Positions 6,851-64,000 of a stretch of DNA of 64,000 nt are shown piece after piece (position 1 is the stretch's first letter; every line of letters begins with the position of its first letter). The position numbers were made by a program, and so were the translations under genes. The stretch spans positions 9,367,436-9,431,435 of the forward strand of contig NC_068996.1 in NCBI RefSeq assembly GCF_001194135.2. The letters run 5' to 3'. The notes beneath the pieces were generated by a model. That model ran no database searches and was not told the DNA's origin. It saw only the letters and a program-made list of their open reading frames with translations. The DNA comes from Octopus bimaculoides. Lineage: Eukaryota.

Positions 6851-7427
6851 TATATGTGCTCGCATACATTTCCATACATCTATATATACATTTATATTTA
6901 TATATATATACACACACACACACACGTTTATTCACATACATACAGCTGTGGAATACGGAGAAATGGTTTAAACATATTTTTTTCTCTCCTCTCTAACGTA
7001 TCTGATTATGGTTGTGTTGTATATATATGTATATAATTTGATACATTAGCATCTAAAATATCTTATATATGTATATAATATATATATGCTAAGATTCGTG
7101 TGTTTACATAATTAAGTTTTGCGTGCGGGTGTGTAATTTTGGTAAACAAAACAAACCAAGTTTTTTTTTTTATATAAAACTCCGAACATATTAGAAGCAG
7201 TTGTTATGTGTGTATGTAAAGTCTTATTGAATTTATGTGTATAATAATTTATTTAAATACATGTATGTGCAAATATTCAGGTTATTATATAGATCTATAT
7301 AATAACCAATATTCATACATACATATATATATATGTACATACACACAAGATATATCGATATATATATATATATATATATTTTTTTCATATTTCCACATCA
7401 TTATATGCGAATCAATTTCCTTTGCAG

Positions 7428-7533
7428 CCTGTTCAGACAGAACCTGTTGATCTCTCATTAAATAAAAAAAAATCTGCCAACTTCCATGATTCCCATCAAG
7501 GTCTGGACTTACGCGTTATCCGGAAAGCAGGAG
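7428..7533 (+). CDS. KLF12: Exon of a KLF3/8/12-subfamily Kruppel-like factor: PVQTEPVDLSLNKKKSANFHDSHQGLDLRVIRKAG (CtBP-binding PVDLS motif)
   Basis: Acceptor tttcctttgcag| and donor gag|gtaagt. 106 nt, phase 0 to 1, open. QTEPVDLSxNK matches the KLF12/8/3 repression motif as I recall it. The symbol denotes the subfamily only, since no zinc fingers are in the window. Confidence 0.85.
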
Positions 7534-7876
7534 GTAAGTAACACGTTCTCTCTCTCTCTCTCTTTTTGACCACATTCTTTCTCTCTCTCTTACACTCTGT
7601 ATCTGTCTTTTCCTCTCGTTTTCATCTTTAACTATTTCTCTCTCTCTCTCGTCTCTTATCTATCTTTCCTCTTTTCCTTTTGTCTTCTATCCTGTCGTAT
7701 TTCTCTTGTCTTCTCTTCCCTGTTATCCTTCTTTCTTCCTGTCTTTTCTCTTCTGTCTTATTCCTTCCTTCCGTCTTTTCTTTCTGTCTTCCGTTTCGTT
7801 GATTCTTGTTTCTTCCTTGTATCTTTTCCCGTCTTTTTTACGTTCCTTTCTTCCTTCCATATTCTCTTTCTCTCTC

Positions 7877-12949: not shown

Positions 12950-14016
12950 CACACGCGCTATCGCAGTGACCCACACATATTCAAACAACCACAGCGATAC
13001 ACGTAGACACGTCACAGTAATCCTCACACGTGCAATCACAGCAAACTAAACACACTCACACACATTCACTCATATAATCGCAGCAACCCACACATATGCA
13101 AACAACCACAACAATACGCATAGATACATCGTTGCAATCCATACACACACATGCAATCATAACAACCAAAGCACAGACACGTACACACACACACATTCAT
13201 GCATATAATCACAGCAGCCCACACATGTACAATCACATCCACCCACATGTATACAATCACAGTGACCCACACATACCCTAAGAACTACAGTGACACACTC
13301 TCATAATCACAGTGATCCACACATACAATCACAGCAAACTTAAAACACACACACATAATCACAGCAACCCATATGCATGCAGTCACAATAATCTACACAC
13401 ACACACACACACAATATCACAGTGATATGAGCAGACAATCATGGTGACCCATNNNNNNNNNNNNNNNNNNNNNNNNNNNNNNNNNNNNNNNNNNNNNNNN
13501 NNNNNNNNNNNNNNNNNNNNNNNNNNNNNNNNNNNNNNNNNNNNNNNNNNNNNNNNNNNNNNNNNNNNNNNNNNNNNNNNNNNNNNNNNNNNNNNNNNNN
13601 NNNNNNNNNNNNNNNNNNNNNNNNNNNNNNNNNNNNNNNNNNNNNNNNNNNNNNNNNNNNNNNNNNNNNNNNNNNNNNNNNNNNNNNNNNNNNNNNNNNN
13701 NNNNNNNNNNNNNNNNNNNNNNNNNNNNNNNNNNNNNNNNNNNNNNNNNNNNNNNNNNNNNNNNNNNNNNNNNNNNNNNNNNNNNNNNNNNNNNNNNNNN
13801 NNNNNNNNNNNNNNNNNNNNNNNNNNNNNNNNNNNNNNNNNNNNNNNNNNNNNNNNNNNNNNNNNNNNNNNNNNNNNNNNNNNNNNNNNNNNNNNNNNNN
13901 NNNNNNNNNNNNNNNNNNNNNNNNNNNNNNNNNNNNNNNNNNNNNNNNNNNNNNNNNNNNNNNNNNNNNNNNNNNNNNNNNNNNNNNNNNNNNNNNNNNN
14001 NNNNNNATATATATAT

Positions 14017-19833: not shown

Positions 19834-20925
19834 TAAGGTTGAATAAAAAGTAAGCAATGTTTTGAATCATGAAGAACTTGTACTGGATTTTTGCATAGTT
19901 TGGAATTTTTTTAAACATTCTTTATTTTTTTTTTTTTTGCAATTGTCTGATAATACAGACATAGACGTGCCCAAATGCATCGATAAATCAACATTGATTG
20001 TCTTTTGCACTGTTGTTACAATCATCTGAAATGGAACTATCAAAGCATGATATTCAAGCAATTTTGCTATTCAACTTCAAAAAAAGATGTAAAAGCAGCT
20101 GAAACTGTTTGCAATATCAGCGAAACATTTGGTGAGGAAATGACCAGTGAGTGGTCAGCTCAAAAATGGTTTAAACAATTTTGCAGTGGAGAGCTGAGCC
20201 TTGAAGATTGTGAACATAGTGGACACCCATCTGTCATCGATGACGGTCAATTAAAGACTGTCATTGAGAAAAATCCACATAAAACCACACAAAAACTTGC
20301 AAAAGAACTTGAAGTTAGCCAGAAAACTGTCTGCAACCATTCGCATGCAATTGGAAAATCAAAAAAGCTCGATTTGAAAGAAAATCATAAAATGCACAGA
20401 TATGAAATTTGCTCCTCGCTTCTTCTCCGTAACCAGACCGATCCATTTCTTGACCATATCGTAACTTGTGATGAAAAGTGGATTCTGTACAATAATAAAA
20501 ATGTTCTTCACAGTGGTTGGACCAAAATGAAGCACTGAAAATCTTCCCTAAACCCAAGCTCTTCAAAAAGAAGGTCATGGTGACTGTTTGGTGGTGTACT
20601 GCTGGACTCATCCATTATAACTTCTAAAAACCCGGGAAAACCATTACTACAGAAATATATTCCATAAAATTGCCAAAATGGATGAAAAACTGGTACTCCT
20701 TCATCACAGACTGATCAACAGAAGAGGGCCAATCATTCTTCATGACAATGCTCAACCACACATTTCACTAATGACACTCCAGAAGTTGAGGAAACCTGGC
20801 TACAGAGTTTTTCTCCAGACCTTTCTCCTACCGATTACCACTTTTTCAAGCACCTTGATGGTTTCCTGTGAGAGAAGGAGTTCAAAAATGAAACCAATGC
20901 TGAGAGTGCATTCAAAGTGTTCCTA
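19834..20925 (+). mobile_element. Decayed mariner (DD34D) DNA transposon
   Basis: HTH region plus catalytic motifs IVTCDEKWILY, KKVMVTVWW, IILHDNAQPH and SPDLSPTDYHFF across frameshifts/stops. WVPHEL linker deleted. TIR-like taaggttgaataaaaagtaa at the left end; right end truncated. Confidence 0.92.
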
Positions 20926-21186
20926 TAAATATTTACATATATCTATCTATATATATATACTTATATGTATACATACATACATACATACACATATATATAT
21001 ATATATATATATATAGCCATGGCTGTGTGATAAGAAGCCTGCTTCCCAATTACATGGTTCCAGGTTCAGTCCTACTGTGTGTCACCTTGGGCAAGTATCT
21101 TCTACTATAGACTTAGGCTGACCAAAGACTTGTAAATGGATTTGGTAGATGGAAACTGAAAGAAGCCCACTGTGTGTGTGTTTGTG

Positions 21187-23420: not shown

Positions 23421-26400
23421 AGAAACTGAAAGAATCCTGTCATCTATATGCATGTGTTTGTATCTGCTTGACAACCGATGTCAGTGTGTTTATGTCCCTG
23501 TGACTTAGCAACTCAGCAAAAGGGACAAAATAACTATCCTAACTTCTCATTCTCTGGTCTTCTCTCTGAATCTTCATCTTCTTACAGCACACAAACTACA
23601 AATGTTTCAGCTGGATGAACATCAATCATCAGCCCATACAGGTCACTGACATTTCCCGTCATTAGACTGTGGCCATGCTGGGGCACCACCTTGAAGAATT
23701 TTAGTCAAATGAATTGACCCCAGGCCTTTTTGGCTTTTTTAAAGCCTAGTTCTTATTCTATTCAGACACAAAGACACTCATACATAGATTATCATCATCA
23801 TCATTTAATGTCTACCTTCCATGCTGGCATGATTTTGGACAGTTTGACTGGGGCCAGTAATTCATGGTTTGAAAAATACATCATGAGTTTTCTTTTCTCA
23901 GAACAAGAGTTACACACATCATAGCGGTAAAAGCAAAAGGAAGTGTTCATGGTTAATGAAAATGTCCAAGGTTAGCCAGTGCTCTGTAAGAAATATCCTA
24001 AAAATGTTTTACAAATCTTACAATTACTATTTTCTTGAACACCCCACTGACTGTCATCATTGGTAATATTGTCAATGTCTTCTCTGAAATGATTGTGTAT
24101 TAATTCCAGTTGTGTCAGTTATAAATGAAGTGATTAATAAACATTTTTTGAGTGTATATCAATCACTTAGTATCACAACTAAGTCAGTGTAATTTCTGCT
24201 TCAGCACAACATTAACTACACAAACATATTTTTACCTCTGGGGAAAATAATCCATATTAGTCTAGTCTCTAGCCTTTTGTGTATTCCATATGGGAGGCCA
24301 TACAAGGAACTTGGGGTTGCTGGTGCACACAAGCCACATACTCCAATAAGGATTGTTTGGGTTAGTAAAGTAAATGACAACATTAACCTTTTAGCATTCA
24401 GATTTCTTTGTCACCTGTAATACTCGTTTATTCACAGTTTTTAATTAATCAGGCATTGTCTTGTAGCTTCAAGATTCCAATGGTGTGTTTGTATAATTTT
24501 AGAATGACATTGTAGGGTAAGTGTGAGAGGCTGGATCTGGTCAGTTTTAACATAAGACTGGTAGAATATTTGGGTCAGATATGGCCGGATTAAGTGCTAA
24601 AGAGTTTATGACCTCTTATTGCTCCCTGGACAGTCTATACCACCCTATTACGATCCTGTCTTTTTGATGTACAGTAGTTAGGTACCAGACTTATTGTGTG
24701 ATTTGTGGCACTTTTTTTAAATAGATTGCTCATATTACAGCTTATGTAAAGTAGGTCTGTCATGCTCCTGTTCAGTATCACAAACCTATATGTTGTAACT
24801 AGCACTGCAGATGTGTTAATAGTACAGAGAGTTATTCTAACAGTTAAATTTGTTTTTCTTTTCTGTCAAAGTTTTTATTTTATTTTTTTTATTTCTCATT
24901 CAGGCACATTCCGCACAAAATACACTTCTACTCTCATTTGTAAAATATGGAAATTCAAATTTATCCAGTTCCCTCTGCTTATTCTTGCTCATTTTCTTGT
25001 TAGATTCTTGCTTTCTTCCATTGCAAAAAAGATGTGTCTCAGTCTCCATACTAAACTACTTAACGTTTGCTGAAGACACTTTCAAGCTGAGGACATTCAT
25101 AGAATACAATTTCATGGTAGATGAACTTAGTCTTTTCCCTCATCTCACTTTCTCCCCCTGTAGGTTTTTTTTTTTTTTTTCATTTTTAATTAGCCCACTT
25201 ACAGGTAAACAAGCTTCGGGTGAAAGGAAATCTAGAAATGTTGTCTGAGCAACCAGAAGCAGCATGATTGATTGTTCCTTCATTAACTCGCATATTCTGC
25301 CGTAATATTTTGTTTCATCCGTATACATTTCAGCATACATATTTTGGGAAGTTTCTGGTGGTGAAGGTGTCGAAACCAAAAGAGATTTGTCAGTTTCAGC
25401 TTTTGAGTCCTCTGCTTCTCAACAATTGTTCAGTTTTTTTTTCTTTATCAGTTTCACCTTCGACTAGTCTTGTTCGGTATTTACAATGTAAAGGATTTTC
25501 TTGCCAATGTTTTCAACTTGACACTTTCAAATAATCCCCATTTCAGGTCCCACTCACCTTAGCTCTTAACACCTGTTTGTTCTTTTAACCTGTGTTTAAT
25601 ATTTATTGTCTTTGCTGAAGACAGCAGTTTTTTTTTGTTTTTTTTTGTTTTTTGTTTTTTTCCATTTGAATATAATCCTTTGTGTGTCAGCTTTTTGGAT
25701 AGTATAATTCTAAAGGCAGTCATTATGTTTCTTATTTTCCTGTTATGTCTTGCCCAGTTCACTTTGCATTCAGTTTAACCTTTTGCCTGTCCAAAACATT
25801 TTCATAACTTTGTCCTAAATATCCACACTTGTTTTTTTAGATTTTTAGTTGGCCCTTGTTTAATATGTTCTGAATAATATAAAGCTTTGTGGTTGGAAAA
25901 AAATTATGAATGCGTATCATTTATGATACAAGGTTACCAGGGAAATATATTTTGTGTGTTACATGTGACACACAGGTAGAACAAAAAGTGAAGCAATATT
26001 TTGACTATAATGGCACCCATGCCAACGTCGTCTCCTTCATTGGATACGAAACTTGGTTTGCGAAGACTTGTTGGGGCAAGCGAAAGCGAAATCGTGATGA
26101 CACCTGTGTCCAGCGTCGCCTTCCTGGCGCTTGTGCCGGTGGAAATGGAAAAGACATTTGAGCGAGATCATTGCCAGTGCTGCTGGACTGGCTCCTGTGC
26201 AGGTGGTACGTAAAATACACCATTTTGAGCGTGGCCGTTGCCAGTACCACCTGACTGGCCTTCGTGCCGGTGGCACGTAAAAGCACCCACTACACTCTCA
26301 GAGTGGTTGGCGTTAGGAAGGGCATCCAGCTGTAGAAACTCTGCCAAATCAGATTGGAGCCTGGTGTAGCCATCTGGTTCACCAGTCCTCAGTCAAATTG

Positions 26401-27063: not shown

Positions 27064-28952
27064 TTTAATGCCCGGCTGGAAAGAAGTGGTGATAGGGAGT
27101 GCACTTGGAATATTATTCTTCGAATAGGGACCAGAACTGCCTTTTTGGTTTGCCATTCATATCATGGCTACTATTTTCATGATCCACATAATAGGAAACA
27201 ATGTCAAAAGCCAACTGGTGCCAATCCATTTCATACTCAAATTCGTACTTGCTCAATTTTTCAAATGCTTTCAGAACTGTGCTTTTGCCAAGTGGTGGTA
27301 TTTGGTGATAAAAATCATCATCATCATTATTGGATTTTTTTGTAAATTTTTCATTCCTTTTAATATTCCCTCATCTAGTTCTCTGCACTTGTGGCAAATA
27401 ATTAAATTATTGTTGCTGACAAAGTGGAGGCATAACTTTATTATGTGTATGATAATTATACAAACATATATTCATAAATACACGCACATACGCACACATA
27501 CACACACTCTCATGTTGTGTCAATGGATGCAGTCATAAAAAAAACATCACCAACATCTACTTCCTACAGAAGATAAGACCGAGATGAACTAGAAACATTC
27601 AATGGTGTTAGGGATGTCAGTGTTCCAAACTAAGCAGAAATGAAAAATCATTGATTAAGAAAAATTAGAGAAACACAATCATGTTTTCAACATGTTTGGA
27701 TGAAAAATTGTTCCCTATAGATGTATGTCATCATCATTATCATTGTCATCATCATTTTAACATCCACTTTTTTCATGCTCACGATCAGAGAGAATTTGTT
27801 GAAACAGATTTATCTACAACCAGATGCCCTTCCTGTTGCCAACAGTCAACCTTTTTTCAAGCAAGGTAATATTTCTTTCACCATGACCAGAAATGTTTTT
27901 CATGGAAGATTGGAAATGAAGGACACCACTTGTATGAAGGTGACACTCCTTTACAACCATCATGCCAAGTCAAAGCAACAAGACAGTAACACACACATAC
28001 ATACACACATATACATGTACAATGATCATCTTTCAGTTTCTCTCTACCAAATCCTCTCACAAGGCTTTGGTCAGCTCATGTCTATAGTAGAAGGCATTTT
28101 CCCAAGTTGCCATGCAGTGGGACTGAGCCCAAAACCATGTGGTTGAGAGGCAAACTTCACACCACACAGCGATGCCCACTCTACATATCTATCTATCTAT
28201 CTATCTATTGGTCAGTCTGTCTCACTGTCTCTTTATGTCTGTCTAAGTCTATCATTTTATCTGTCTATTCAATACTTATCACCAATGCTAGCATGGAAGG
28301 TGGACGTTAAACGATGATGATGATGATGATGATATAGCCAGGAGTGACTGTGTGTTAAGAAGCTTGCTTCCCAACCATGTGGTTCTGGGTCCAGTCCCAC
28401 TGCATGGCACCTTGGACAGGTGTCTTTTTCTGTAACTTTGGACTAACCAAAGCCTTTTGAGTAGATTTTGTAGACAGAAGTTGAAAAACGCCTATTGTAT
28501 ATGTGTGTGTGTGTGTGTTTTCCCCCCTCCCCCATCACACTTGACAACTAGTGTTGGTGTGTTTACATCCCTGTAACTTAGTGGTTTGGCAAAAGAGACC
28601 AATAGAGTAAGTACCGAGCTTAAAAAAATAAGCACTGGGATCAATTCATTCGACTAAAAATTCAAGGTGGTGCCCCAGCCTGGCCGCAGTTTAATGACTG
28701 AAACAGATAAAAGATAAAAGACGTGTGTGTGTGTATGTGTTTCCATTAATAAATGTATAAAATGATGGTGTGCATTGATTGTACGTGTGTGTTCCTAAAT
28801 CTCTAGGTATGATGGCTGTGTACCAATACATGTCACTGCCTTGTATGCATAATGTCTGTGTGTTCAATCGTGTTCTTATGTCCACATGACAAATCTTTGT
28901 TGAGATCTTATATTGTCTTAAGTAGCCATTCTCTCCAGAATTGAATTTTCCC

Positions 28953-29970: not shown

Positions 29971-30896
29971 TATAAACATGCGTTGGTGGTTTCTTAGCAA
30001 AACTTGTAGATGTCTGTCTCATTTTTTTCTTTATGCATTTTTTTTCTACATTGGAATCAACTTTTATTGTTTAAGTTAAAAATATTCCTTTATCACATTA
30101 ATTATCTGTCATTTTCTTATTTTTACTTTATCGTCCACCATACTAAAGAAAATGGTGTTTTACTCCCAAATTTTTCTAACTTTTGTTATACTTTTGTCTT
30201 GATAGTATTCTATAATCTAATTTCCACAATATTCTATTATAAAAAAAAATACGTGTTTGTTATTCCAAGACCAGTATGTTGGTTACATGTTGTACAGTTG
30301 TACAGTTACACTCACAAAAGTGATGTGGTTTCCCCTCAAAAATGTTGTCATTAGGATGGAGCACAATCCCCTGAATCCTTCTTGTTAAAGACACCAACCC
30401 CTTCAATATATTTTCTATATTTGTAACTGAAATCTCAGAATGGTATCTCTATCACTATAAAAGTAATAGCTCCCAACTTTTATTTTTGTGGTTTCTAAGA
30501 TATGTTAAGTCTACACCTGGGATTCACAAACCATTTTTTGCCTATGGATCCCTTTGGTTCTTCTTTTACTCAGTTGGACCCTTATAACTATTCAATGTTT
30601 TAAAAATCTTATTATATTTTTTAGAATTAAATATTATTAGGAGCTGTATAAAAAATTTTTTAAAATTCTTTAGATATTTTGTGTATAGCAGAAGTTTAAA
30701 CAATTTATTACTCTTTTACTCTTTTACTTGTTTCAGTCATATGACTGCGGCCATGCTGGAGCACCGCCTTTAGTCGAGTAAATCGACCCCCAGGACTTAT
30801 TCTTTGGAAGCCTAGTACTTATTCTATCAGTCTCTTTTGCCGAACCGCTAAGTTACGGGGACGTAAACACACCAGCATCGGTTGTCNNNNNNNNNN

Positions 30897-30931
<35 letters not shown>

Positions 30932-33625
30932 CTTCTTTCAGTTTCTCTCTATCAAATCCACTCACAAGGCTTTGGTTGGCCCGAGGCTATAGTAGAAGAC
31001 ACTTGCCCAAGGTGCCACGCATTTGGGACTGAACCCGGAACCATGTGGTTGGTAAGCAAGCTACTTAACAAACAGGACCCCCGAGGGCCATATAGACCCC
31101 TGTTGAGAACCACGGGTCTAGCTTTGTATTCTTAGTTTATACAGTGTTAACAGTAATTTTAAGAAGTTGTTTTGTGGCTAACCCTTTTAATTTGAACCAT
31201 CCAAAATACAGTCACTGGTTCTGTGATACAAACTTCCTCTTTTACACACAGATATCTAAGCTAAAACCTTCCACTGGAATTTTGTATTGATTTATGTTCC
31301 AAACAGTAATAAAGGTTAATAAAGACAATGTTATTTTACTGAATTCTTCATTATTTTTGGCTTTCATTGAAACGAAGGCAATGTATTTCAACAGAAATAT
31401 GTTAACAAAGGGTTAGGACAGTGCTAATGTTTGTGTCTATAAGTAGATTCTTAAGAGAGAGAGAGATAGAGAAGTTGGTAGACAAATAGGCAAGTTAACT
31501 CTAATTGAAATTATTCCAGTCATTTGGAAATAATAATAATAAAAAAAGAACTTTCTGGAACACACAACCAGTTAGTTTGACATCAATTTAGAAGTGAATT
31601 TTAGAATTATTATTTCATGTCTATAGCAAATCATTTCTTCTCTTCCTCAAATCGTTCAAACAACAGATGTTTGGAAGTCTAGGATTGTTGTTTGTGATTT
31701 TGAATAGATTGAAAATAGTGTTTGCACAATTTTCGGAGAAATTCTGACAGGAGTCGTGATGAGCATGATTATTCCATAGACTTCCATTTTTAGATTCAGA
31801 ATAAAAGAAAGAGTAGGGTAAGAAACTAACCAGCTCAGAAGAAATTATTTCATATCCACTGCAGGTATACATCATCATCATTGTAATTAATGTCACTTTT
31901 CTATGCTGGCATGGGTTGGACAGAATTTGTTGAGGCAGATTTCCTACAGTCAGATACCCTTCCTGTCACTAACTCTCACCTGTTTCCAAGCAGAGTAGTA
32001 AATTATACAAAGAAACACCTTAATGACCAGCTCTATATAACAACATCTGTTAGTCTGGTTAATAAAATGATACAGTGAGATATATATGTTAGTGTGTGTG
32101 TGTGTGTTTATATAATATATATTTATATTCATAAGCAAGAATATTGACAGTGACTTCAAGATCATTGTCAATTCTTGTTAAAGAATTATAAATTTGAATG
32201 CTACAAAAGTATAAGGTAAACCTTGAGCTTAATGTAAAATTGTTTTTATTATTATTGATCATTAAAAACAAACATTAATAAAAACATAGATGTGCATCTT
32301 GGTTAAATGCCTTCTACTATAGTGCTAGGTGAGCCAATGCCATTTGAGTGAATTTGGTGCACAGAAACTGAGTGGAAGCCTATTGTGTATGTGTTTGTGT
32401 TTGTCTCCACCACTACAAGCACTTGACAACTTGACAACCAGTGTTGGTTTGTTTATATTTCCATGGCATTAATGGTTCTGCAAAAGAAGGATGCAGAATA
32501 AGAACCAGACATGAATGAATAGTACTGAGTCAATTTGTTCAGATAAACCCTTTAAGATAAACTCCTACATGGCTGCCGTCCAATAACTGAAGCAAGTAAA
32601 AGATAGACAGACAGACAAGATAATGCATGACAAAATAGATCTTTTATCCTGTTTAAGTCATTAGACTGTGGCAATGCTGGGGTGCTGCCTCGAAGAATAT
32701 TTTTCTGTCAAATCAACCTCAGGATTTTTTTTTTTTTCTAAACTTGGTGCTTATTCTATCGATTTCTTTTTGATGAACTACTAAGTTAAAAGAGACAAGC
32801 AGTGGTGGGTGACAAACACGCACACAAACAAATATATATGTATTTGGACTTCTTTCAGTTTCTGTCTACCAAATCCATTCACAAGATTTTAGTCAACCCA
32901 AGGTGATAGAAGACACTTGCCCAAAGTACCACACAGTGGGACTGAACCCAGAACCCCGTGGTTGGGAAACAAACTTCTTAACATACAGCCACGCCTACAT
33001 ATGGAGTACGCATTTTTTTTTTTCTTTTCCTTTTAGTTTATTTTAGATTTCACTATGACTACCTTTCGATATATCTCTCTATATATAATAGTAGTAAAAT
33101 TTTGTTTGTTGGTTACCGTTGGTTGGTTTGAGAATTAAACTATACATTGTCGCAATAAAATGTTTTGAAACATGTACTCTTAGTCATAAGCCAACATTCA
33201 TGACAAAATGTTGAGGGAATCTGACTCCTGGAGGCCTCAAAAGAGAAGAATTCTGACGCAGAAAAAAAAAGTTGTTGCTGTCTCTGAAAGAGAAAGAAAA
33301 CAAAGAGAATGAACTTGGAATACACACATGCGCACACACATACTCACTCACGCACATACTATGCTTTTTGACACTGAGCCATTCATATCAAAGACACAGA
33401 CATACACACACACAGAGACATACACACACACACAGACATACACACACACACAATGGTATTTTCTTTTAAGTAGTCTTCTGTAATTAAAAGAAAATATTAG
33501 TGTTTTGTGTATGTGTGTGTGTGTGTGTGTATCTTATGTAATTTCATGATTTATGAATGACATTTGTTTTAGATGAGTCTCATCTTTCCTCTGTCTCTCT
33601 GTCTCTTTCTCTCTCTCTCTTTATC

Positions 33626-40955: not shown

Positions 40956-41006
<51 letters not shown>

Positions 41007-41048
41007 GAGAGATAGATTGATAGATAGATAGATAGATAGATAGATAGT

Positions 41049-41512
41049 GTGTCAATAGCCAGCTGGAGGAGGTGTCTTCCTGGGGCTACAAGCTACAGTA
41101 GCATCAATCCTTAAAGGTTAGCCATGTTTAGGTGGCAAATATACTTCACGATGTCGTGCGGCTACTGTTTATACCTTGCTCAGAAATTTATTATTGCTTG
41201 TTTCCACTTTTACAAGATCAGTGACTTTCCGTCACTGGAAAAAGTGTATATATTTTGCATTGAGAATCACTCAACCAGTAATTGTCACACACTGATGACG
41301 GGTCAATACCCAGAAACTTGGGTCTGTATGCATCCTGTCAGGCTGGAGATGGGAAGGATGACTTCCCTTTGCACGGAAAGTGTCAATAGCCAGCTGGAGG
41401 AGATGTCCTCCTGGGGATACATGCTACAGTAGCATCAATCCTTAAGGGTTAGCCACATTTAGGTGGCAAATATACTTCAGGATGTTGTGCAGCTATTGTT
41501 TATACCTCACTC
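41049..41512 (+). mobile_element. Hammerhead-containing head-to-tail repeat of 331-bp period (about 1.4 units); retrozyme-like or Penelope pseudo-LTR relic
   Basis: 41049-41181 repeats at 41380-41512 (13 mismatches in 133 nt by my count). The hammerhead lies in the unique part; a SINE truncates the second unit. Confidence 0.65.
41286..41330 (+). ncRNA. Type I hammerhead ribozyme motif
   Basis: CACACA-CTGATGA-C GGGT caat ACCC A-GAA-ACTTGGGT-C-TGTATG. Canonical core, helix I 5/6 bp, helix II 4 bp, self-complementary helix III, GUC triplet at 41322-41324. Confidence 0.8.
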
Positions 41513-44450
41513 TGGCTTTGAGGTAAGTAGCTTGCTTACCAACCACATGGTTCCGGGTTCAGTCTCACAGCATGGCACCTTGGGCAAGTGTCTTCTACTA
41601 TAGCCTTGGGCCGACCAAAGCCTTGTTAGTGGATTTGGTAGACAGAAACTGAAAAGAAGCCCGTTGTATATATGTATGTGTGTTTGTGTNNNNNNNNNNN
41701 NNNNNNNNNNNNNNNNNNNNNNNNNNNNNNNNNNNNNNNNNNNNNNNNNNNNNNNNNNNNNNNNNNNNNNNNNNNNNNNNNNNNNNNNNNNNNNNNNNNN
41801 NNNNNNNNNNNNNNNNNNNNNNNNNNNNNNNNNNNNNNNNNNNNNNNNNNNNNNNNNNNNNNNNNNNNNNNNNNNNNNNNNNNNNNNNNNNNNNNNNNNN
41901 NNNNNNNNNNNNNNNNNNNNNNNNNNNNNNNNNNNNNNNNNNNNNNNNNNNNNNNNNNNNNNNNNNNNNNNNNNNNNNNNNNNNNNNNNNNNNNNNNNNN
42001 NNNNNNNNNNNNNNNNNNNNNNNNNNNNNNNNNNNNNNNNNNNNNNNNNNNNNNNNNNNNNNNNNNNNNNNNNNNNNNNNNNNNNNNNNNNNNNNNNNNN
42101 NNNNNNNNNNNNNNNNNNNNNNNNNNNNNNNNNNNNNNNNNNNNNNNNNNNNNNNNNNNNNNNNNNNNNNNNNNNNNNNNNNNNNNNNNNNNNNNNNNNN
42201 NNNNNNNNNNNNNNNNNNNNNNNNNNNNNNNNNNNNNNNNNNNNNNNNNNNNNNNNNNNNNNNNNNNNNNNNNNNNNNNNNNNNNNNNNNNNNNNNNNNN
42301 NNNNNNNNNNNNNNNNNNNNNNNNNNNNNNNNNNNNNNNNNNNNNNNNNNNNNNNNNNNNNNNNNNNNNNNNNNNNNNNNNNNNNNNNNNNNNNNNNNNN
42401 NNNNNNNNNNNNNNNNNNNNNNNNNNNNNNNNNNNNNNNNNNNNNNNNNNCACACACACACACACACACACACTCACAATGCACACCAGTCACATGTCAA
42501 AGCAGAACAAACAAACAAACAAACAAGCAAAAAGGAGAAAAAAAAAACTCTGGATGACTGATGCAGGATGTGATATGTGGTGGGTGGGTGGATGGGTGTG
42601 AGAGAGAAAGAAAAGAGGAACTATGCCTTTCCTTCTTCTCTCTCTTTCCGTCTCTTTCACCCAAATATTCATACACACACACACACACACACACACACAA
42701 GTTGACTGAGAGTGGTTTCTCTCTCTTCTCCATATAAACCTCCATTCTCCCCCAACCCCACCCTTCTCTCTCTTATTCAACCACTCTCAATGAGATTCTA
42801 GTAAAGTCCCTTACATATTTGGTTTGGTGATAAAAGGCATTCTCATTATGACCCCTTCTACTTTGTCTAATGTGTCTTTTTTGTATTTAAGACAGTTATT
42901 TAAAAAAAAAAAATTAAAAAATAGGCTGTTATTTCTAGCAGGTTGCGTGATCACTTAAAAGAAGTTTCCATCTAGGCTCATCTTGATCCCTGTCTCATCT
43001 CATTCATCTCATCCATATGGCTAATGTTTCCAGGAAAGCTAAAAGATTGAGCTTGCCCCCATTCCAAAAACCAAAAAAAAAAGACAAAAAAGATTTTAAA
43101 AATCTCATCTACTAAATCCTTTCACAAGGTATTGGTCAACCTGGGACTATAGTAGAAGTACTTGCTCAAGGTGTTACACAGTTGTGTTCAGTGCCACTAC
43201 ATGGTAATTTGGATATCCTCTATTGCTCGGGGCTGATCAATGCCCTGTGAGTGAATTTCATAGATGGAAGCTGTGTAGAAGACCATCATGTGTGTGTGTG
43301 TGAATGTATGTGTGTGTATTATGCATGTATATATTTATATGTCCCCCACCATCACCACCACTGCTATTAACAACTGGTGTTGTTTTGTTTACGTCCCTGT
43401 AACTTAGTGGTTCGGCAAAAGATACCGGTGGAATAAGTACCGGGTTTAACCCTTTAGCATTTAAACCAGACATATCTGGCTCAAAAGATTCTTCCTGTTT
43501 TATTTTCGTGTTCAAATTGGTCAGATCCTACCTCTCATACCAACCCTACACTGTCATTCTAAAAATAGGCAATCCACATCATCAAAATCTTATAGCTACA
43601 TGATAAACCATGATTAATTAAAAAGACAGACAGACTGATCAGAATACTGTGTGGGATAAAGATATGAGAATCAATTTGTTGAAAAAATAAGTACTAGGAT
43701 CAATTCATTCAACTAAAAATTCTAGGTGGTGCCCCAGCATGGCCACAGTCTAATGACTGAAATAGATAAAAGATATACTTTTAGATTACTTGCAACACTG
43801 TGTTCCTTAACATTATGAATATCAGAACCCTTGTAAGACCAAATTTGTTTTTTGTTTTTCCAGAGTCAATAAAATAAGTTACCATTCCAAAGAATAAAAA
43901 ATTTACTTTATCTGCTGTAACTGTATATAATGTTAACTCCCACATGTTGAACCTAAATATCAGTCGTGTATTTGACTGTTAGATGAATTCATTTGTGTTT
44001 GGTAGGAATAGAGAAGGATTCAATTTGGCACTCTGTTTCTGAAAAGGAGTAAAAAAATTTTTTTAATTTCAAAAGCAATAGAAAGAGTCGTTGAAAAAGA
44101 ATAGAGCTACAAAATAAAAAAATAATAATAAATAAATAAAACGCTATGATAAAAATATTTTTCTTGTTAATTGAAACAACACTAGAAAGAACTAAAATAA
44201 ATGGAAAAAAGGACCAATTCATTTGTCTGTCCAATAGTTTACCCCCCCCCCTTTTTGTGTGTTTGTTTGTTGTTTTTTAAACTCCACAATTGCTGCTGCA
44301 CAGTTTTTCCACACTGCTACCACGCCAAAGATGATACTGGAGCTCAACACGGCCCTGCCACCCACCAGTTTCCTGTCAAAAGCCAACATTAACTGATGAT
44401 AATGAGAATGTTGCTATAGGATGATTGTTATTTTAGAAGTGCTGTAAGTT

Positions 44451-45125: not shown

Positions 45126-45522
45126 CTCTTTTACTCTTTTACTTGTTTCAGTCATTTGACTGCGGCCATGCTGGAGCACTGCTTTTTTAGTCGAGCAAAT
45201 CGACCCCAGGACTTATTCTTTGGAAGCCTAGTACTTATTCTATCAGTCTCTTTTGCCGAACCGCTAAGTTACGGGGACGTAAACACACCAGCATCGGTTG
45301 TCAAGTGATGGTGGGGAGACAAATACAGACACACAAACACACATACATATATACATACATATATATACGACGGGCTTCTTTCAGTTTCCGTCTACCAAAT
45401 CCACTCACAAGGCTTTGGTCGGCCCGAGGCTATAGTAGAAGACACTTGCCCAAAGTGTCACACAGTGGGACTGAACCTGGAACCATGTGGTTCGTAAGCA
45501 AGCTACTTACCACACAGCCACT
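45126..45522 (-). mobile_element. tRNA-derived SINE family A, near full length (internal TA/CA microsatellite, GTAAAAGA tail)
   Basis: Head ggctgtgtggtaagtagcttgc...ggttcagtcccac with A/B-box-like motifs. At least 18 copies in the window, e.g. 7985-8295(-), 17863-18580(+), 18590-18935(-), 21019-21355(+), 28335-28720(+), 30711-31068(-), 32640-32995(-), 56845-57262(-). Confidence 0.9.
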
Positions 45523-50040: not shown

Positions 50041-50970
50041 TTTACTTGTTTCAGTCATTTGACTGCGGCCATGCTGGAGCACCGTCTTTAGTCAAATCAA
50101 ATCGACCCCAGGACTTATTCTTTGTAAGCCTAGAACTTATTCTATCGGTCTCTTTTTGCCGAACCGCTATTTTACGGGTACGTAAACACACCAGCATCGG
50201 TTGTCAAGCGATGTTGGGGGGACAAACACAGACACACAAACACTCATACATATATATNNNNNNNNNNNNNNNNNNNNNNNNNNNNNNNNNNNNNNNNNNN
50301 NNNNNNNNNNNNNNNNNNNNNNNNNNNNNNNNNNNNNNNNNNNNNNNNNNNNNNNNNNNNNNNNNNNNNNNNNNNNNNNNNNNNNNNNNNNNNNNNNNNN
50401 NNNNNNNNNNNNNNNNNNNNNNNNNNNNNNNNNNNNNNNNNNNNNNNNNNNNNNNNNNNNNNNNNNNNNNNNNNNNNNNNNNNNNNNNNNNNNNNNNNNN
50501 NNNNNNNNNNNNNNNNNNNNNNNNNNNNNNNNNNNNNNNNNNNNNNNNNNNNNNNNNNNNNNNNNNNNNNNNNNNNNNNNNNNNNNNNNNNNNNNNNNNN
50601 NNNNNNNNNNNNNNNNNNNNNNNNNNNNNNNNNNNNNNNNNNNNNNNNNNNNNNNNNNNNNNNNNNNNNNNNNNNNNNNNNNNNNNNNNNNNNNNNNNNN
50701 NNNNNNNNNNNNNNNNNNNNNNNNNNNNNNNNNNNNNNNNNNNNNNNNNNNNNNNNNNNNNNNNNNNNNNNNNNNNNNNNNNNNNNNNNNNNNNNNNNNN
50801 NNNNNNNNNNNNNNNNNNNNNNNNNNNNNNNNNNNNNNNNNNNNNNNNNNNNNNNNNNNNNNNNNNNNNNNNNNNNNNNNNNNNNNNNNNNNNNNNNNNN
50901 NNNNNNNNNNNNNNNNNNNNNNNNNNNNNNNNNNNNNNNNNNNNNNNNNNNNNNNNNNNNNNNNNNNATG

Positions 50971-51043
<73 letters not shown>

Positions 51044-51233
51044 GTATGTATATATATATATACATATATATGATGGGCTTCTTTCAGTTTCCATCTACCA
51101 AATCCACTCACAATGCTTTTGTCGGCCCGAGGCTATAGTAGAAGACACTTGCCCAAGGTGCCACGCAGTGGGACTGAACCCGGAACCATGTGGTTGGTAA
51201 ACAAGCTACTTACCACACAGCCACTCCTGCGCC
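50041..51233 (-). mobile_element. SINE family A spanning an N gap at its internal microsatellite
   Basis: Both halves are colinear with the 45126-45522 copy; complete 5' end ggcgcaggagtggctgtgtgg. Confidence 0.9.
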
Positions 51234-51577
51234 TACGAACTTCTGCTAACATGCAAAAAACATTCACAGAAAATGTCTGACGTATATATATGCAAACACA
51301 CACAAGCACATTCAGATCCAATTTGTGTGTATGCATATGCATTGATGTATACAAACATAATGCATATTATGTGCACATAACATAACTGGTTTACAATGGA
51401 ATGCATGTGCACACATGCATGCATGCTGTGTGTGTAGGTATGTTTGTATGTGTGTCGTGGGTGTATTCTTGTTGTATTTGTGTGTGTGTGTGTAGATATC
51501 CATGTGTGCTTATAATGTCTGCTCTTAAATGCATGCAGACTGGATGGATACTGCACACTTTCATTTATCTTTGATTT

Positions 51578-60226: not shown

Positions 60227-61260
60227 CATCATCATCATCATCGTTTAACGTCCGCTTTCCATGCTAGCATGGGTTGGACGATTTGACTGAGGACTGGTGA
60301 AACCGGATGGCAACACCAGGNNNNNNNNNNNNNNNNNNNNNNNNNNNNNNNNNNNNNNNNNNNNNNNNNNNNNNNNNNNNNNNNNNNNNNNNNNNNNNNN
60401 NNNNNNNNNNNNNNNNNNNNNNNNNNNNNNNNNNNNNNNNNNNNNNNNNNNNNNNNNNNNNNNNNNNNNNNNNNNNNNNNNNNNNNNNNNNNNNNNNNNN
60501 NNNNNNNNNNNNNNNNNNNNNNNNNNNNNNNNNNNNNNNNNNNNNNNNNNNNNNNNNNNNNNNNNNNNNNNNNNNNNNNNNNNNNNNNNNNNNNNNNNNN
60601 NNNNNNNNNNNNNNNNNNNNNNNNNNNNNNNNNNNNNNNNNNNNNNNNNNNNNNNNNNNNNNNNNNNNNNNNNNNNNNNNNNNNNNNNNNNNNNNNNNNN
60701 NNNNNNNNNNNNNNNNNNNNNNNNNNNNNNNNNNNNNNNNNNNNNNNNNNNNNNNNNNNNNNNNNNNNNNNNNNNNNNNNNNNNNNNNNNNNNNNNNNNN
60801 NNNNNNNNNNNNNNNNNNNNNNNNNNNNNNNNNNNNNNNNNNNNNNNNNNNNNNNNNNNNNNNNNNNNNNNNNNNNNNNNNNNNNNNNNNNNNNNNNNNN
60901 NNNNNNNNNNNNNNNNNNNNNNNNNNNNNNNNNNCTCTCTTGCACACCACAACTGATGCTTCTAATGTTCAGCTTTTCTCTCAAGATATTTACACTCTGA
61001 CGGGTATTCACATTGACATTACACATCCAACGGAGCATACTGGCTTCATTCCTTGCGAGCTTACGTATGTCCTCAGCAGTTACAGCCCATGTTTCACTGC
61101 CATGTAGCATGGCTGTTCGTACGCATGCGTCATACAGTCTGCCTTTTACTCTGAGTGAGAGTCCCTTTGTCGCCAGCAGGGGTAAGAGCTCTCTAAACTT
61201 TGCCCAGGCTATTCTTATTCTAGCAGCTACACTTTCAGCGCACCCACCCCCACTACTAAC
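60226..61260 (-). mobile_element. RTE-clade LINE fragment of the same family, spanning an assembly gap
   Basis: MLHGSETWAVTAEDIRKLARNEASMLRWMCNV at 60935-61260; tail (GAT)n at 60226-60243. Confidence 0.85.
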
Positions 61261-62786
61261 TTATGTGTGAGTGTGTGTGTGTGTGTGGTACTAGAGCTGA
61301 TTTGTTTGACTAAACTCATCAAGGTTGTGCCCCAACATGGCCCCAGCTTGATCACTGTAACAAGTAAAAACAGGAGATAAATTGTTTTGTGCAAACAATG
61401 CTTAGTTCCTCACAGTTTGTGTGTGTGTGGTTAACTCCTATACTGTATAAGCATGTGGAGAACGAATTTTGTGAATGTCCTATTTTCTCATGCTCTCATG
61501 GGTTAGGTATATCTGCTGTGCCAACATATTATTGTCATTACTTCTGAATACCATGTCACTTTGTTTGACCCAGCATTCTAAGATTTGACCTCTCCATCTG
61601 CCTATGTCTACCTTGGCCTTCACCGCTTTTTCAACCAGCCATCATTGTCCATTTGCATAATATGCATTGTACAGCTGCAAGCAAGCCAACGTGCTAGAAA
61701 TAGTTGTCGAATTTTCTTTAAATCACAGGACTTACCTACCATCTTTAAAAAAAAGAAAATGGAAATGTTGGATAATGTTAAGGTACTAGAAACTTCTAAA
61801 CACCGCCCCCCCCCCACACACACACACACCCAAAAGACAGGAAGACCATGGTTGAAATAATTTTCATCATAGATCTGCTCAATTATGGCTCACCTGCAGA
61901 TAATTGTCACTTACCAATGCAGGTATTTCATATATTATAACAGTAAGGAAATATTACCTTATTTGAAAACAGGTAAGGGTTGGTGATAGGAAATGCATCC
62001 AGTCCTCACTGCATAGAAAACTTGCCTCAACAAATTCTGCCTGACCCATACAAGCGTGGAAAAGTGGATGTTAAAATACGATGATGTTATATTTTAGTTG
62101 ATATTTGTTAGTTCATGGTGCCACATAAAAAAGCCTGTGTGGCACCACATAAAAGCATCTGTACAGTGCCATGTAAAAGGCACCCAGTGCACTCTGTAAA
62201 GCGGTTGGTATTAGGAAGGGCTTCTATCCATACAAACCATACCAAATCAGACTGGAGCAGCTCCTCAAGTTTACCAGCCCTGGTTAAACCATCCAACCTA
62301 TGCCAGCATGGGCAACAGACATTAAATGATGATGGTGGCGGTGGTGGTGATGAAAACAATGAAGTTAGTTGTTCCATCCTGTGTGTTGTATATATCCCCA
62401 CCATCTGTTGATAGGCTTCAAAGCCCTCTTGAAATATTCAGTGCCATCTGATCATTCTGAATTCTCTTACCTTCTCAGTACAGTTTTTTGCATGCTGGGG
62501 ATCTTGGTTCTGTAGGACATGGCTAGCCACTAACATTCACCATTTTGTTACCTTTTCTTAGAATCTTCATCATGACAATATTGTAGAGACTTCTTCACTA
62601 CTGATATAATTATGGTAGGAAATTCTGGTATTTTTCCTCTATCAGCTTTGTTGAAAGACACTAAATTTCGGTAGTGGTTGTAAGTGATAATTGTATGCGC
62701 ACGCACACAAATGTGTTAAAGATGAAATCAAGATTCTTGCTTTTAACTGCTGGCAGTTTCAGAACTTTTCATCTCCTTTTCTTCAG

Positions 62787-63099: not shown

Positions 63100-63960
63100 C
63101 TCATCATTTAGTGTCTGTTTTCCATGCTGGTATGGGTTAGATGGTTTGGAACTGGTAAGCTGGAGAGCTGTGCTAGGCTCCAGTCTGATTTTGGCTTAGT
63201 TTTTACAGCTGGTTGCCTTTCCTAATGCCAACCACTCCAAGAGTGTAGTGGGTGCTTTTTATGCGTCACTGGCACGAGTGCCTGATACATGTTACCAGCA
63301 CACAAGCGTCCTTACATTGTGCCCCTTATATGTCACTAGCACAAGTGACTTTTGCATGTCACCAGCATGGGTGCCTTTTATGTGTCACCAGCACTAGCCA
63401 CAACTATGATTTCACTTTGCTTGGCAAGTCTTTTCAAGCACAGCAAACCGCCAGTAGTTTCAGCCATTTGTCATTGCCTCCATGAGACCCAACATCCGAA
63501 GATCATGCTTCACCACCTCGTCCCATGTTTCCTGGGTCTACCTCTTCTGCAGGTTCCCTCCACAGTTGGAGATTGGCTCTTCCTTACATAGCTGTACTCA
63601 TCCATATGCATCACATGACCATACGAATGCAGTTGACTCTCTTACACACCACACTTGATAATTCATGCCTAATTTTTCTCTAAAGATGCTTACACTCTGT
63701 TGTACATGCACACTGACATTGCACATTCAGTGGAGCATGCCAGCTTCATTTCTTTCAAGCCTACACATGTCCTCAGCTGTCACAACCCATGTTTCACTGC
63801 CATGTAGCATGGCTGTTTTCACACAGGCATCATACAATCTACCTTTCACTCTGAAGGAGAGGCCCTTTGTTACCAACAAGGGTAGGAGCTCTCTGAACTT
63901 TGCCCAGCCTATTCTTGTTCTAGCAGCTACACTCTTGGAACCCCCCCCCCTACTGCTGCC
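63100..63960 (-). mobile_element. RTE-clade LINE, 5'-truncated (ORF C-terminus plus 3' UTR)
   Basis: Minus strand reads VAARTRIGWAKFRELLPLL...KGRLYDACVKTAMLHGSETW...GHVMHMDE...RRGRP, followed by the family 3' UTR and (GAT)n-like tail. Confidence 0.9.
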
Positions 63961-64000
63961 TTGATCTCCTAGCTAACGAAAGCTATCGATGACTTTTAGG

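What the first reader, a model, noticed from the sequence alone, without database searches (positions are those of the whole stretch)
41049..41512. Retrozyme-like 331-bp tandem unit with a near-complete type I hammerhead ribozyme, sense to the KLF pre-mRNA
Seen: a 133-nt direct repeat at 331-nt spacing (about 90% identical). Between the copies lies CACACA CUGAUGA C-GGGU-caau-ACCC-A GAA ACUUGGGU C| UGUAUG: canonical core, GUC cleavage triplet, helix I 5/6 bp. Helix III is too short for a monomer but fully self-complementary in a dimer (all 8 pairs Watson-Crick or G-U). The unit also has nested hairpins (cactttt/aaaagtg around cagtgac/gtcactg at about 41204-41246; gggaag/cttccc at 41351-41367). 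Established: short tandem monomers with one type I hammerhead and a palindromic helix III define metazoan non-LTR retrozymes (Schistosoma Sm-alpha, newt satellite 2, cricket pDo500) and Penelope pseudo-LTRs. These cut as dimers and can give circular RNAs. Inference: a cephalopod retrozyme family, possibly undescribed, with the potential to cut intron 3 of this gene co-transcriptionally. This copy has a C-A mismatch at the base of helix II, so it may be weakened.
Basis: partly seen in the sequence, partly recalled or inferred. Interest (0 to 1): 0.9.

Follow-up and report, generated by a model that had tools for sequence, protein, structure and literature searches.

The report
Decayed hammerhead retrozyme-like repeat in octopus
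A 331-base tandem repeat in an octopus genome carries one worn-looking copy of a hammerhead self-cutting RNA motif, most likely a dead relic of a known kind of mobile element rather than a working ribozyme or a new kind of system.

Summary
There is a 133-nt direct repeat at 331-nt spacing (90% identity). Between the copies, at 41286-41330 (+), lies a type I hammerhead-shaped motif with an intact core (CUGAUGA / GAAA / GUC). It is the only such motif in the window. Chance predicts about 0.002 per window, or about 1e-5 for this 464-nt stretch. A covariance model built only from four experimentally studied animal retrozyme hammerheads ranks it first (20.8 bits, E about 0.001).

The support has limits:
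- No Rfam hammerhead model reports it, even at E<=10.
- I found no second copy of the unit anywhere I could search, so covariation is untested.
- The locus holds 1.4 units and a single ribozyme. The second unit is cut at 41512 by an abundant octopus SINE, followed by an assembly gap.
- The motif has three weak points: an A-C mismatch in helix I, a C-A mismatch at the base of helix II, and a dimer helix III that is half G-U.
- The two repeat copies show neutral, CpG-driven decay.

Best reading: a decayed fragment of a retrozyme or Penelope-derived hammerhead repeat, inserted beside a (TA)n microsatellite. It cannot make a circle from the sequence resolved here and probably cuts poorly. The KLF host gene is unverified. 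It is a new member of a known kind, of low to moderate interest.

The parts
40959..41047 (.). (TA)24 then (ATAG)n microsatellite directly abutting the 5' end of the repeat; likely the insertion target
   Evidence: TRF rows and the sequence. Penelope-like elements are reported to insert preferentially into microsatellites, with (TA)n for Naiads (PMC8557442).
41049..41379 (+). Unit 1 of the tandem repeat: 331 nt, GC 43.5%, no coding signal
   Evidence: Repeat spacing of 331. GC content and fold. The 102-aa ORF inside it has no homologues.
41286..41330 (+). Type I hammerhead-like motif. The core is intact. Helix I pairs at 5 of 6 positions. Helix II is 4 bp plus a C-A mismatch at its base. Helix III is 2 bp with a UUGG loop. 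The predicted cut is 3' of C41324.
   Evidence: Sequence. Only descriptor hit in the window. Top hit of model R1, 20.8 bits, E about 0.0012, matching the full model. No Rfam hit.
41308..41323 (+). Competing hairpin ACCCAG/CUUGGGU, which ties up the 3' strand of helix II and the cleavage-site strand
   Evidence: Minimum-energy fold of -8.2 kcal/mol against +0.3 for the hammerhead fold. Validated retrozyme hammerheads show gaps of 2.3-7.4 kcal/mol.
41380..41512 (+). Unit 2, truncated: the first 133 nt only, 90% identical to unit 1. All three CpGs of copy 1 are lost here.
41513..41689 (+). tRNA-derived octopus SINE inserted into unit 2. It runs into the N gap at 41690-42450. It is not part of the element but sets its visible end.
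   Evidence: More than 20 copies in the window. Three copies at 87-91% identity in an O. vulgaris chromosome locus.

Best explanation
This is a decayed, truncated relic (1.4 units) of a hammerhead-bearing short tandem retroelement. That class comprises the metazoan non-LTR retrozymes, which are thought to be non-autonomous derivatives of Penelope-like element pseudo-LTRs.

Inferred history. A more-than-unit-length copy of a roughly 331-nt RNA was reverse-transcribed and inserted next to a (TA)n microsatellite in an Octopus genome. A SINE later landed in the second unit. The copies then drifted neutrally to about 10% divergence.

How the ancestral element would have worked. Each unit of a tandem transcript carries one type I hammerhead. 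Its 2-bp helix III is too weak for a lone motif, so neighbouring ribozymes pair through the self-complementary ACUUGGGU stretch to form a double hammerhead. This cuts after GUC and releases unit-length RNA, which a host tRNA ligase can circularise.

What this locus can do. Only one ribozyme remains. It has a helix I mismatch, a C-A mismatch at the base of helix II and a G-U-rich dimer helix. It is therefore probably weak or inactive, and it cannot release a 331-nt monomer from the sequence resolved here.

Shown: the motif, the repeat, the boundaries, the decay pattern and the statistical excess over chance. Inferred: the retroelement origin, the dimer mechanism and the loss of activity.
For: - The core and all three helices are present in type I topology. 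It is the sole descriptor hit in the window.
- Chance rate: 0 of 400 random windows had a hit. The expected rate is about 0.002 per window, which scales to about 1.7e-5 for a 464-nt stretch.
- Model R1, built from the coral, mussel and two axolotl retrozyme hammerheads taken from the supplement of PMC7229834, ranks the motif first in 128 kb searched. The match covers the full model, at 20.8 bits and E about 0.0012. R1 finds nothing in 20 kb of O. vulgaris.
- The CA before the core and the UG after the cut site are invariant in the four validated motifs and are present here.
- Unit size (331 nt) and GC content (43.5%) are in the published range for retrozymes: 150-450 bp and below 50%.
- The element abuts a (TA)n/(ATAG)n microsatellite, which fits the microsatellite insertion bias of PLEs.
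- The helix II base mismatch combined with a 2-bp helix III and a tetraloop has a direct precedent in axolotl HHR_Amex2.
- Decay: 13 differences in 133 nt, 10 of them transitions, with all 3 CpGs lost in copy 2. At that rate about 2 substitutions are expected in a 45-nt motif, which matches the 2 mispairs seen.
- No RT or GIY-YIG hit in the ten longest open frames within about 6 kb, and the unit's ORF has no relatives. Both fit a non-autonomous element.
- Octopus origin.
Against: - No Rfam hammerhead family reports the motif at the gathering score, nor at E<=10 when only 801 or 86 nt are searched.
- No second copy of the unit was found in the window, in L001, in JGI metagenomes or in IMG/VR. 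There is therefore no family, no consensus and no covariation. Cephalopod genomes themselves could not be searched.
- The hammerhead fold scores +0.3 kcal/mol against -8.2 for a competing hairpin. This is the worst value among the motifs compared.
- The unit is only mildly structured: z = -1.46 and 54% paired. Published retrozyme circles are described as highly self-paired.
- At about 36 chance motifs per Gb, a genome of a few Gb would hold on the order of 100 chance matches to my relaxed descriptor. That descriptor was written after seeing the candidate.
- Only 1.4 units and one ribozyme are visible.
Confidence: 0.55

Rival explanations
1. The motif is a chance hammerhead look-alike inside an unrelated local tandem duplication or an uncharacterised low-copy repeat. 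It has no ribozyme ancestry.
For: - No Rfam hit, even at E<=10.
- No other copy of the unit found, and no translated relatives.
- The motif has two mispairs, and its nominal fold is unfavourable.
- About 36 chance matches per Gb are expected for the relaxed descriptor. A second partial core match occurs by chance at 23597-23632 (-).
- The first-stage scan looked at many windows.
Against: - The probability that a given 464-nt stretch holds such a motif is about 1.7e-5 (derived).
- The co-occurrence with a tandem unit of retrozyme size and GC content, a self-complementary helix III, the conserved CA...UG flanks and a microsatellite insertion site all points the same way.
- An independently trained model gives E about 0.001 for a full-length match.
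Confidence: 0.25
2. It is a solo or partial pseudo-LTR tandem left by an autonomous Penelope-like element, not a non-autonomous retrozyme. The RT/GIY-YIG body would have been deleted or would lie in the assembly gap.
For: - PLE pseudo-LTRs carry hammerheads and arise as partial tandems. PLEs also favour microsatellite targets.
- A 761-nt gap lies directly downstream.
- Penelope elements are reported in cephalopod genomes.
Against: - Metazoan PLE hammerheads are described as 'minimal' variants with a long helix II (6-8 bp), a short helix I (4-5 bp) and little or no helix III. This motif has the canonical 6 / 4-5 / 2+tetraloop shape that is associated with retrozymes.
- No RT or endonuclease signal in the ten longest open frames within about 6 kb.
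- The 761-nt gap is too small for a PLE body of about 3 kb.
Confidence: 0.12
3. It is a working intronic ribozyme that cuts the host (KLF-like) pre-mRNA co-transcriptionally and has been kept for regulation.
For: - The motif is on the + strand, the same strand as a candidate exon with a PVDLS CtBP-binding motif and AG/GT borders at 7427-7534.
- Conserved intronic hammerheads exist in amniotes (cited in PMC7229834, reference 22).
Against: - A lone motif with a 2-bp helix III, two mispairs and a stronger competing hairpin.
- The flanking repeat copies show neutral CpG decay.
- The host gene is unconfirmed: no zinc fingers in the window and no database protein shares words with the candidate exon.
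- In Xenopus, retrozymes are depleted from introns.
Confidence: 0.03

Closest known systems
Metazoan non-LTR retrozymes (Cervera and de la Pena, NAR 2020, PMC7229834): coral Amil224, mussel Mg353, axolotl Rtz_331 and Rtz_353
   Same: - Short tandem unit (331 nt here, against 170-400 nt) with GC below 50% and no ORF, LTR, PBS or PPT.
- One type I hammerhead per unit, with a 6-bp helix I, a 4-bp helix II and a short helix III whose strand is self-complementary for dimer formation.
- The closest motif in shape is axolotl HHR_Amex2: a 2-bp helix III with a tetraloop, and a mismatch at the base of helix II.
   Different: - Only 1.4 units and one ribozyme are visible.
- No other genomic copies were found.
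- The mismatch is C-A on top of a 4-bp stem, so helix II spans five positions rather than four.
- The dimer helix is half G-U (-4.2 kcal/mol, against -10 to -13 for coral, mussel and Ax353).
- The unit is only weakly self-paired.
- Expression and circles are untested.
Hammerheads in Penelope-like element pseudo-LTRs (Cervera and de la Pena 2014, PMC4209133; Craig et al. 2021, PMC8557442)
   Same: - Partial-tandem layout.
- Insertion next to a microsatellite.
- An unpaired nucleotide after A9.
- A palindromic 15.2-16.2 and loop 3 region.
- Proposed action as a dimer.
   Different: - No RT/GIY-YIG ORF nearby.
- The helix lengths are canonical rather than of the 'minimal' PLE type.
- There is an extra A between C11.1 and G12, which is not part of the described consensus.
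Schistosoma Sm-alpha, newt satellite 2 and cricket pDo500 hammerhead repeats
   Same: Classical short tandem or SINE-like repeats with a type I hammerhead and a weak helix III that favours dimer cleavage. This comparison rests on my own knowledge and on the introduction of PMC7229834.
   Different: No sequence comparison was made here. ARAGORN found no tRNA-like gene in the unit. Loop-loop tertiary contacts were not assessed.

Membership tests
Hammerhead ribozyme, type I | Conserved core boxes CUGANGA, GAAA and a (R)UH cleavage triplet | tested here: met
   CUGAUGA at 41292-41298, GAAA at 41313-41316 and GUC at 41322-41324.
Hammerhead ribozyme, type I | Three helices around the core, with helix I open-ended and helices II and III closed by loops | tested here: met
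   Helix I pairs at 5 of 6 positions. Helix II is GGGU/ACCC with a CAAU loop. Helix III is AC/GU with a UUGG loop. The nominal fold scores +0.3 kcal/mol.
Hammerhead ribozyme, type I | G10.1-C11.1 pair stacked directly on the core | tested here: not met
   C41299 and A41312 form a C-A mismatch between the core and the first G-C pair. There is a published precedent for a mismatch at this position: U-U in axolotl HHR_Amex2, which is still active.
Hammerhead ribozyme, type I | Reaches the curated Rfam score for a hammerhead family | tested here: not met
   No hammerhead match at the gathering score over the whole window, nor at E<=10 over 801 nt or 86 nt.
Hammerhead ribozyme, type I | Helices supported by covariation among relatives | not testable with these tools
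   No relatives were retrieved. No cephalopod genome collection was available.
Hammerhead ribozyme, type I | Mg2+-dependent self-cleavage after position 17 | not testable with these tools
   This needs in vitro transcription of monomer and dimer constructs.
Metazoan non-LTR retrozyme | Head-to-tail tandem repeats of about 150-450 bp, each unit carrying one type I hammerhead | tested here: inconclusive
   The period is 331 nt, but only 1.4 units and one hammerhead are visible. Unit 2 is cut by a SINE and an N gap.
Metazoan non-LTR retrozyme | Low GC content (below 50%), non-coding, no LTR, PBS or PPT | tested here: met
   GC is 43.5%. The only long ORF has no homologues or domains.
Metazoan non-LTR retrozyme | Multi-copy family dispersed in the genome | tested here: inconclusive
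   No further copy was found in the 64-kb window or in 20 kb of O. vulgaris. That sample is far too small to exclude a family.
Metazoan non-LTR retrozyme | Unit RNA is highly self-paired and accumulates as a circle | tested here: inconclusive
   The circular fold has z = -1.46 and is 54% paired. Expression cannot be tested here.
Penelope-like element pseudo-LTR | Direct repeats flank an ORF encoding RT and a GIY-YIG endonuclease | tested here: not met
   No Pfam RT or GIY-YIG hit in the ten longest open frames within about 6 kb. Only a 761-nt gap is unresolved.

The most novel reading that the evidence does not exclude
The locus is a dead copy of an undescribed Octopus retrozyme family that is still active elsewhere in the genome. 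That family would form long 331-nt tandem arrays with intact hammerheads and would be expressed as small circular RNAs in cephalopod tissues.
Probability: 0.25. Interest if true: 0.45.

Novelty: new member of a known kind. Interest (0 to 1): 0.3.

Why it matters
If a family stands behind this copy, documented hammerhead retrozymes would extend to cephalopods. It would also give a handle on small ribozyme-derived circular RNAs in an animal group known for unusual RNA biology. That would add to an established picture: retrozymes are already described in cnidarians, mussels, amphibians and many invertebrate phyla, and type I hammerhead hits are already reported in the giant squid annotation. It would not be a new principle. 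This particular locus is most likely inert. Its practical value is as a seed sequence for a genome-wide search.

Tried and rejected
- Rfam scans at three scales gave no hammerhead hit.
- A self-BLAST of the unit against the window found only the SINE repeated.
- The unit's 102-aa ORF, used as a handle to pull family copies from protein collections, gave nothing: exact look-up, word-indexed search, and full HMMER search of 1.84 billion representatives, whose single hit was weak (E 1.9e-4), fragmented into 9 stretches, and which I set aside.
- Exact and degenerate DNA patterns found nothing in JGI metagenomes or IMG/VR.
- I tried to identify the host gene from the PVDLS candidate exon. The first query was too short. 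The second found no protein sharing words with it.
- A regex for C2H2 fingers and the TGEKP linker found none, so 'KLF' stays unverified.
It was replaced by the ten longest open frames, which gave nothing.
- I fetched Octopus DNA through a mariner ORF. Only one 20-kb O. vulgaris locus was obtainable. It confirmed the genus through shared SINEs but held no copy of the unit.
- An exact look-up of the mariner ORF to name the source assembly found nothing on record.
- ARAGORN found no tRNA gene in the unit, so nothing supports a tRNA-like Pol III promoter in the style of Sm-alpha.
- The second model hit at 23597-23624 (-) was inspected and rejected. It has CUGAUGA and GAAAC but no clean helix II and no helix I.

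Full report
**What is there**

A 133-nt direct repeat (41049-41181 and 41380-41512) is 90% identical at 331-nt spacing.

In the single-copy part between the repeats, the + strand reads as follows:

CACACA CUGAUGA C GGGU CAAU ACCC A GAA AC UUGG GU C / UGUAUG (41286-41330)

This is a type I hammerhead layout:
- The CUGAUGA, GAAA and GUC boxes are intact.
- Helix I has 6 positions with one A-C mismatch.
- Helix II is a 4-bp stem with a tetraloop, sitting on a C-A mismatch.
- Helix III is 2 bp with a UUGG loop.
- The predicted cut is 3' of C41324.

The eight bases ACUUGGGU can pair with a second copy of themselves at all positions. Four of those pairs are G-U, and the duplex is worth only -4.2 kcal/mol.

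**Boundaries**

- Upstream, the repeat starts directly at a (TA)24/(ATAG)n microsatellite at 40959-41047.
- Downstream, the second unit stops at 41512 because a SINE begins at 41513.
- That SINE has more than 20 copies in the window and three copies at 87-91% identity in a 20-kb piece of an Octopus vulgaris chromosome.
- The SINE runs into an N gap at 41690-42450.

The visible element is therefore 1.4 units with a single hammerhead. Whether the array continues in the gap is unknown. Past the gap, no unit sequence is found.

The SINE identity, together with a mariner ORF whose best named relative is from O. vulgaris, places the window in the genus Octopus.

**Is it more than chance?**

I wrote a descriptor loose enough to include the candidate's helix II mismatch.
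- It finds the candidate as the only hit on either strand of the window.
- It found none in 400 random windows generated with the window's dinucleotide statistics.
- Counting partial matches and multiplying by the helix I probability gives about 0.002 expected per window, or about 36 per Gb.

A genome of a few Gb would therefore hold on the order of a hundred chance matches. The probability that one falls in a given 464-nt stretch is about 1.7e-5.

As a test that was not fitted to the candidate, I took the four hammerheads of experimentally studied retrozymes from the supplement of PMC7229834: coral Amil224, mussel Mg353 and axolotl Ax353 and Ax330. I aligned them and built covariance model R1.
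- R1 ranks the candidate first in the window. The match covers the full model at 20.8 bits, with E about 0.0012 under a rough calibration.
- R1 finds nothing in the O. vulgaris locus.
- The only other window hit is partial, at 23597-23624 (-). On inspection it lacks helices I and II.
- The CA before the core and the UG after the cut are invariant in the four validated motifs. Both are present in the candidate.

**What counts against it**

- No Rfam hammerhead model reports it, at the gathering score or at E<=10 when only 801 or 86 nt are searched.
- No relative of the unit was found by any route open to me: the window itself, the O. vulgaris locus, exact and degenerate patterns in JGI metagenomes and IMG/VR, and translated searches with the unit's 102-aa open frame.
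- None of these collections is a cephalopod genome, so this is absence of a test rather than a negative result. It does leave the key criterion, covariation in a family, open.
- The nominal hammerhead fold scores +0.3 kcal/mol, while a competing hairpin (ACCCAG/CUUGGGU) gives -8.2. The validated motifs also fold more stably in other ways, with gaps of 2.3-7.4 kcal/mol. The candidate is the weakest of those compared.
- The whole unit is only mildly structured: z = -1.46 and 54% paired.

**Decay**

The two 133-nt copies differ at 13 positions. Ten of the differences are transitions, and all three CpGs of copy 1 are lost in copy 2. This is the pattern of neutral decay in methylated DNA.

At that divergence, about two substitutions are expected in a 45-nt motif. 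Two mispairs are seen. Two transitions (A41312 to G and A41328 to G) would give a fold of -9.3 kcal/mol, better than any of the validated motifs. This fits a worn copy of a once-sound ribozyme, but it is inference, not evidence.

**Comparison with what is known**

- PMC4209133 describes the canonical metazoan type I hammerhead as helix I of 6 bp, helix II of 4 bp and helix III of 1-2 bp capped by a 2-4 nt palindromic loop. It works as a dimer in tandem repeats.
- PMC7229834 defines non-LTR retrozymes as tandem repeats of about 170-400 nt with GC below 50%, expressed as circular RNAs.
- Axolotl HHR_Amex2 has a 2-bp helix III with a tetraloop and a U-U mismatch at the base of helix II. It cleaves 22% in an hour as a monomer and much better as a dimer. 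This is the closest published shape.
- A 2026 preprint argues that animal retrozymes derive from Penelope-like pseudo-LTRs, and finds them depleted from introns in Xenopus.
- Penelope-like elements favour microsatellite targets, with (TA)n for Naiads. That fits the upstream boundary here.
- The ten longest open frames within about 6 kb show no RT or GIY-YIG signal. The helix lengths are canonical rather than of the 'minimal' PLE type. A non-autonomous retrozyme-type element therefore fits better than a PLE remnant.
- Cephalopod hammerheads are not unheard of. The giant squid annotation lists 235 Rfam Hammerhead_1 loci.

**Host gene**

The 'KLF' claim could not be confirmed.
- The window has no C2H2 finger and no TGEKP linker in any frame.
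- A candidate + strand exon at 7427-7534 has AG/GT borders and encodes PVQTEPVDLSLNKKK..., which includes a CtBP-binding PVDLS motif of the KLF3/8/12 kind. My reading of that motif rests on my own knowledge.
- No protein in the 5.8-billion-sequence collection shares words with it.

'Sense to a KLF pre-mRNA, intron 3' remains a guess. A lone, weakened hammerhead with a 2-bp helix III would in any case be a poor co-transcriptional cutter.

**Verdict**

- Most likely (about 0.55): a decayed, SINE-interrupted relic of a hammerhead tandem retroelement of the retrozyme/PLE lineage.
- About 0.25: a chance motif in an unrelated duplication.
- About 0.12: a PLE pseudo-LTR remnant.
- About 0.03: a working intronic ribozyme.

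It is a new member of a known kind and of low to moderate interest. Its main use is as a query for a proper search of cephalopod genomes.

Noticed in passing
window 41513-41689, with more than 20 further copies (e.g. 45132-45522, 51017-51236, 30715-31075, 28339-28714): An abundant tRNA-derived SINE, about 400 bp at full length. It makes up a visible share of the window. Copies in Octopus vulgaris chromosome OX597819.1 are 87-92% identical.
   Followed up: partly
window 19836-21016 (+): A mariner/SETMAR-like transposase remnant (ORFs at 20005-20538 and 20678-21016). It is 82% identical at the DNA level to a copy in O. vulgaris locus L001 9820-10888. The best named protein hit is O. vulgaris 'SETMAR-like'.
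   Followed up: partly
window 7427-7534 (+): A candidate exon with AG/GT borders encoding PVQTEPVDLSLNKKKSANFHDSHQGLDLRVIRKAGG, which contains a PVDLS CtBP-binding motif. No protein in the large collection shares words with it, and the window has no zinc-finger exon.
   Followed up: partly
window 60935-61262 and 63404-63987 (-): LINE-type reverse-transcriptase C-terminal fragments (e.g. ...MLHGSETWAVTAEDIRKLARNEASMLRWM...). They also match L001 17026-17612 at 75-87% identity. They are not Penelope-like.
   Followed up: no
window 23597-23632 (-): A second CUGAUGA...GAAAC...GUA arrangement, picked up as a partial hit by model R1 (15.9 bits). It has no helix I and no clean helix II, so it is a chance core match.
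   Followed up: yes
window 41308-41323 (+): GGGU occurs twice: once in the 5' strand of helix II and once in the cleavage-site strand. ACCC can pair with either, which gives a hairpin 8.5 kcal/mol more stable than the hammerhead fold. Whether this is a switch or an accident is unknown.
   Followed up: partly
window, 13 N runs (e.g. 13453-14006, 41690-42450, 50258-50967): The window has 4646 N in 13 gaps. Many of them sit next to microsatellites or SINE tails, as in a short-read scaffold assembly. One gap hides whatever follows the truncated second unit.
   Followed up: no
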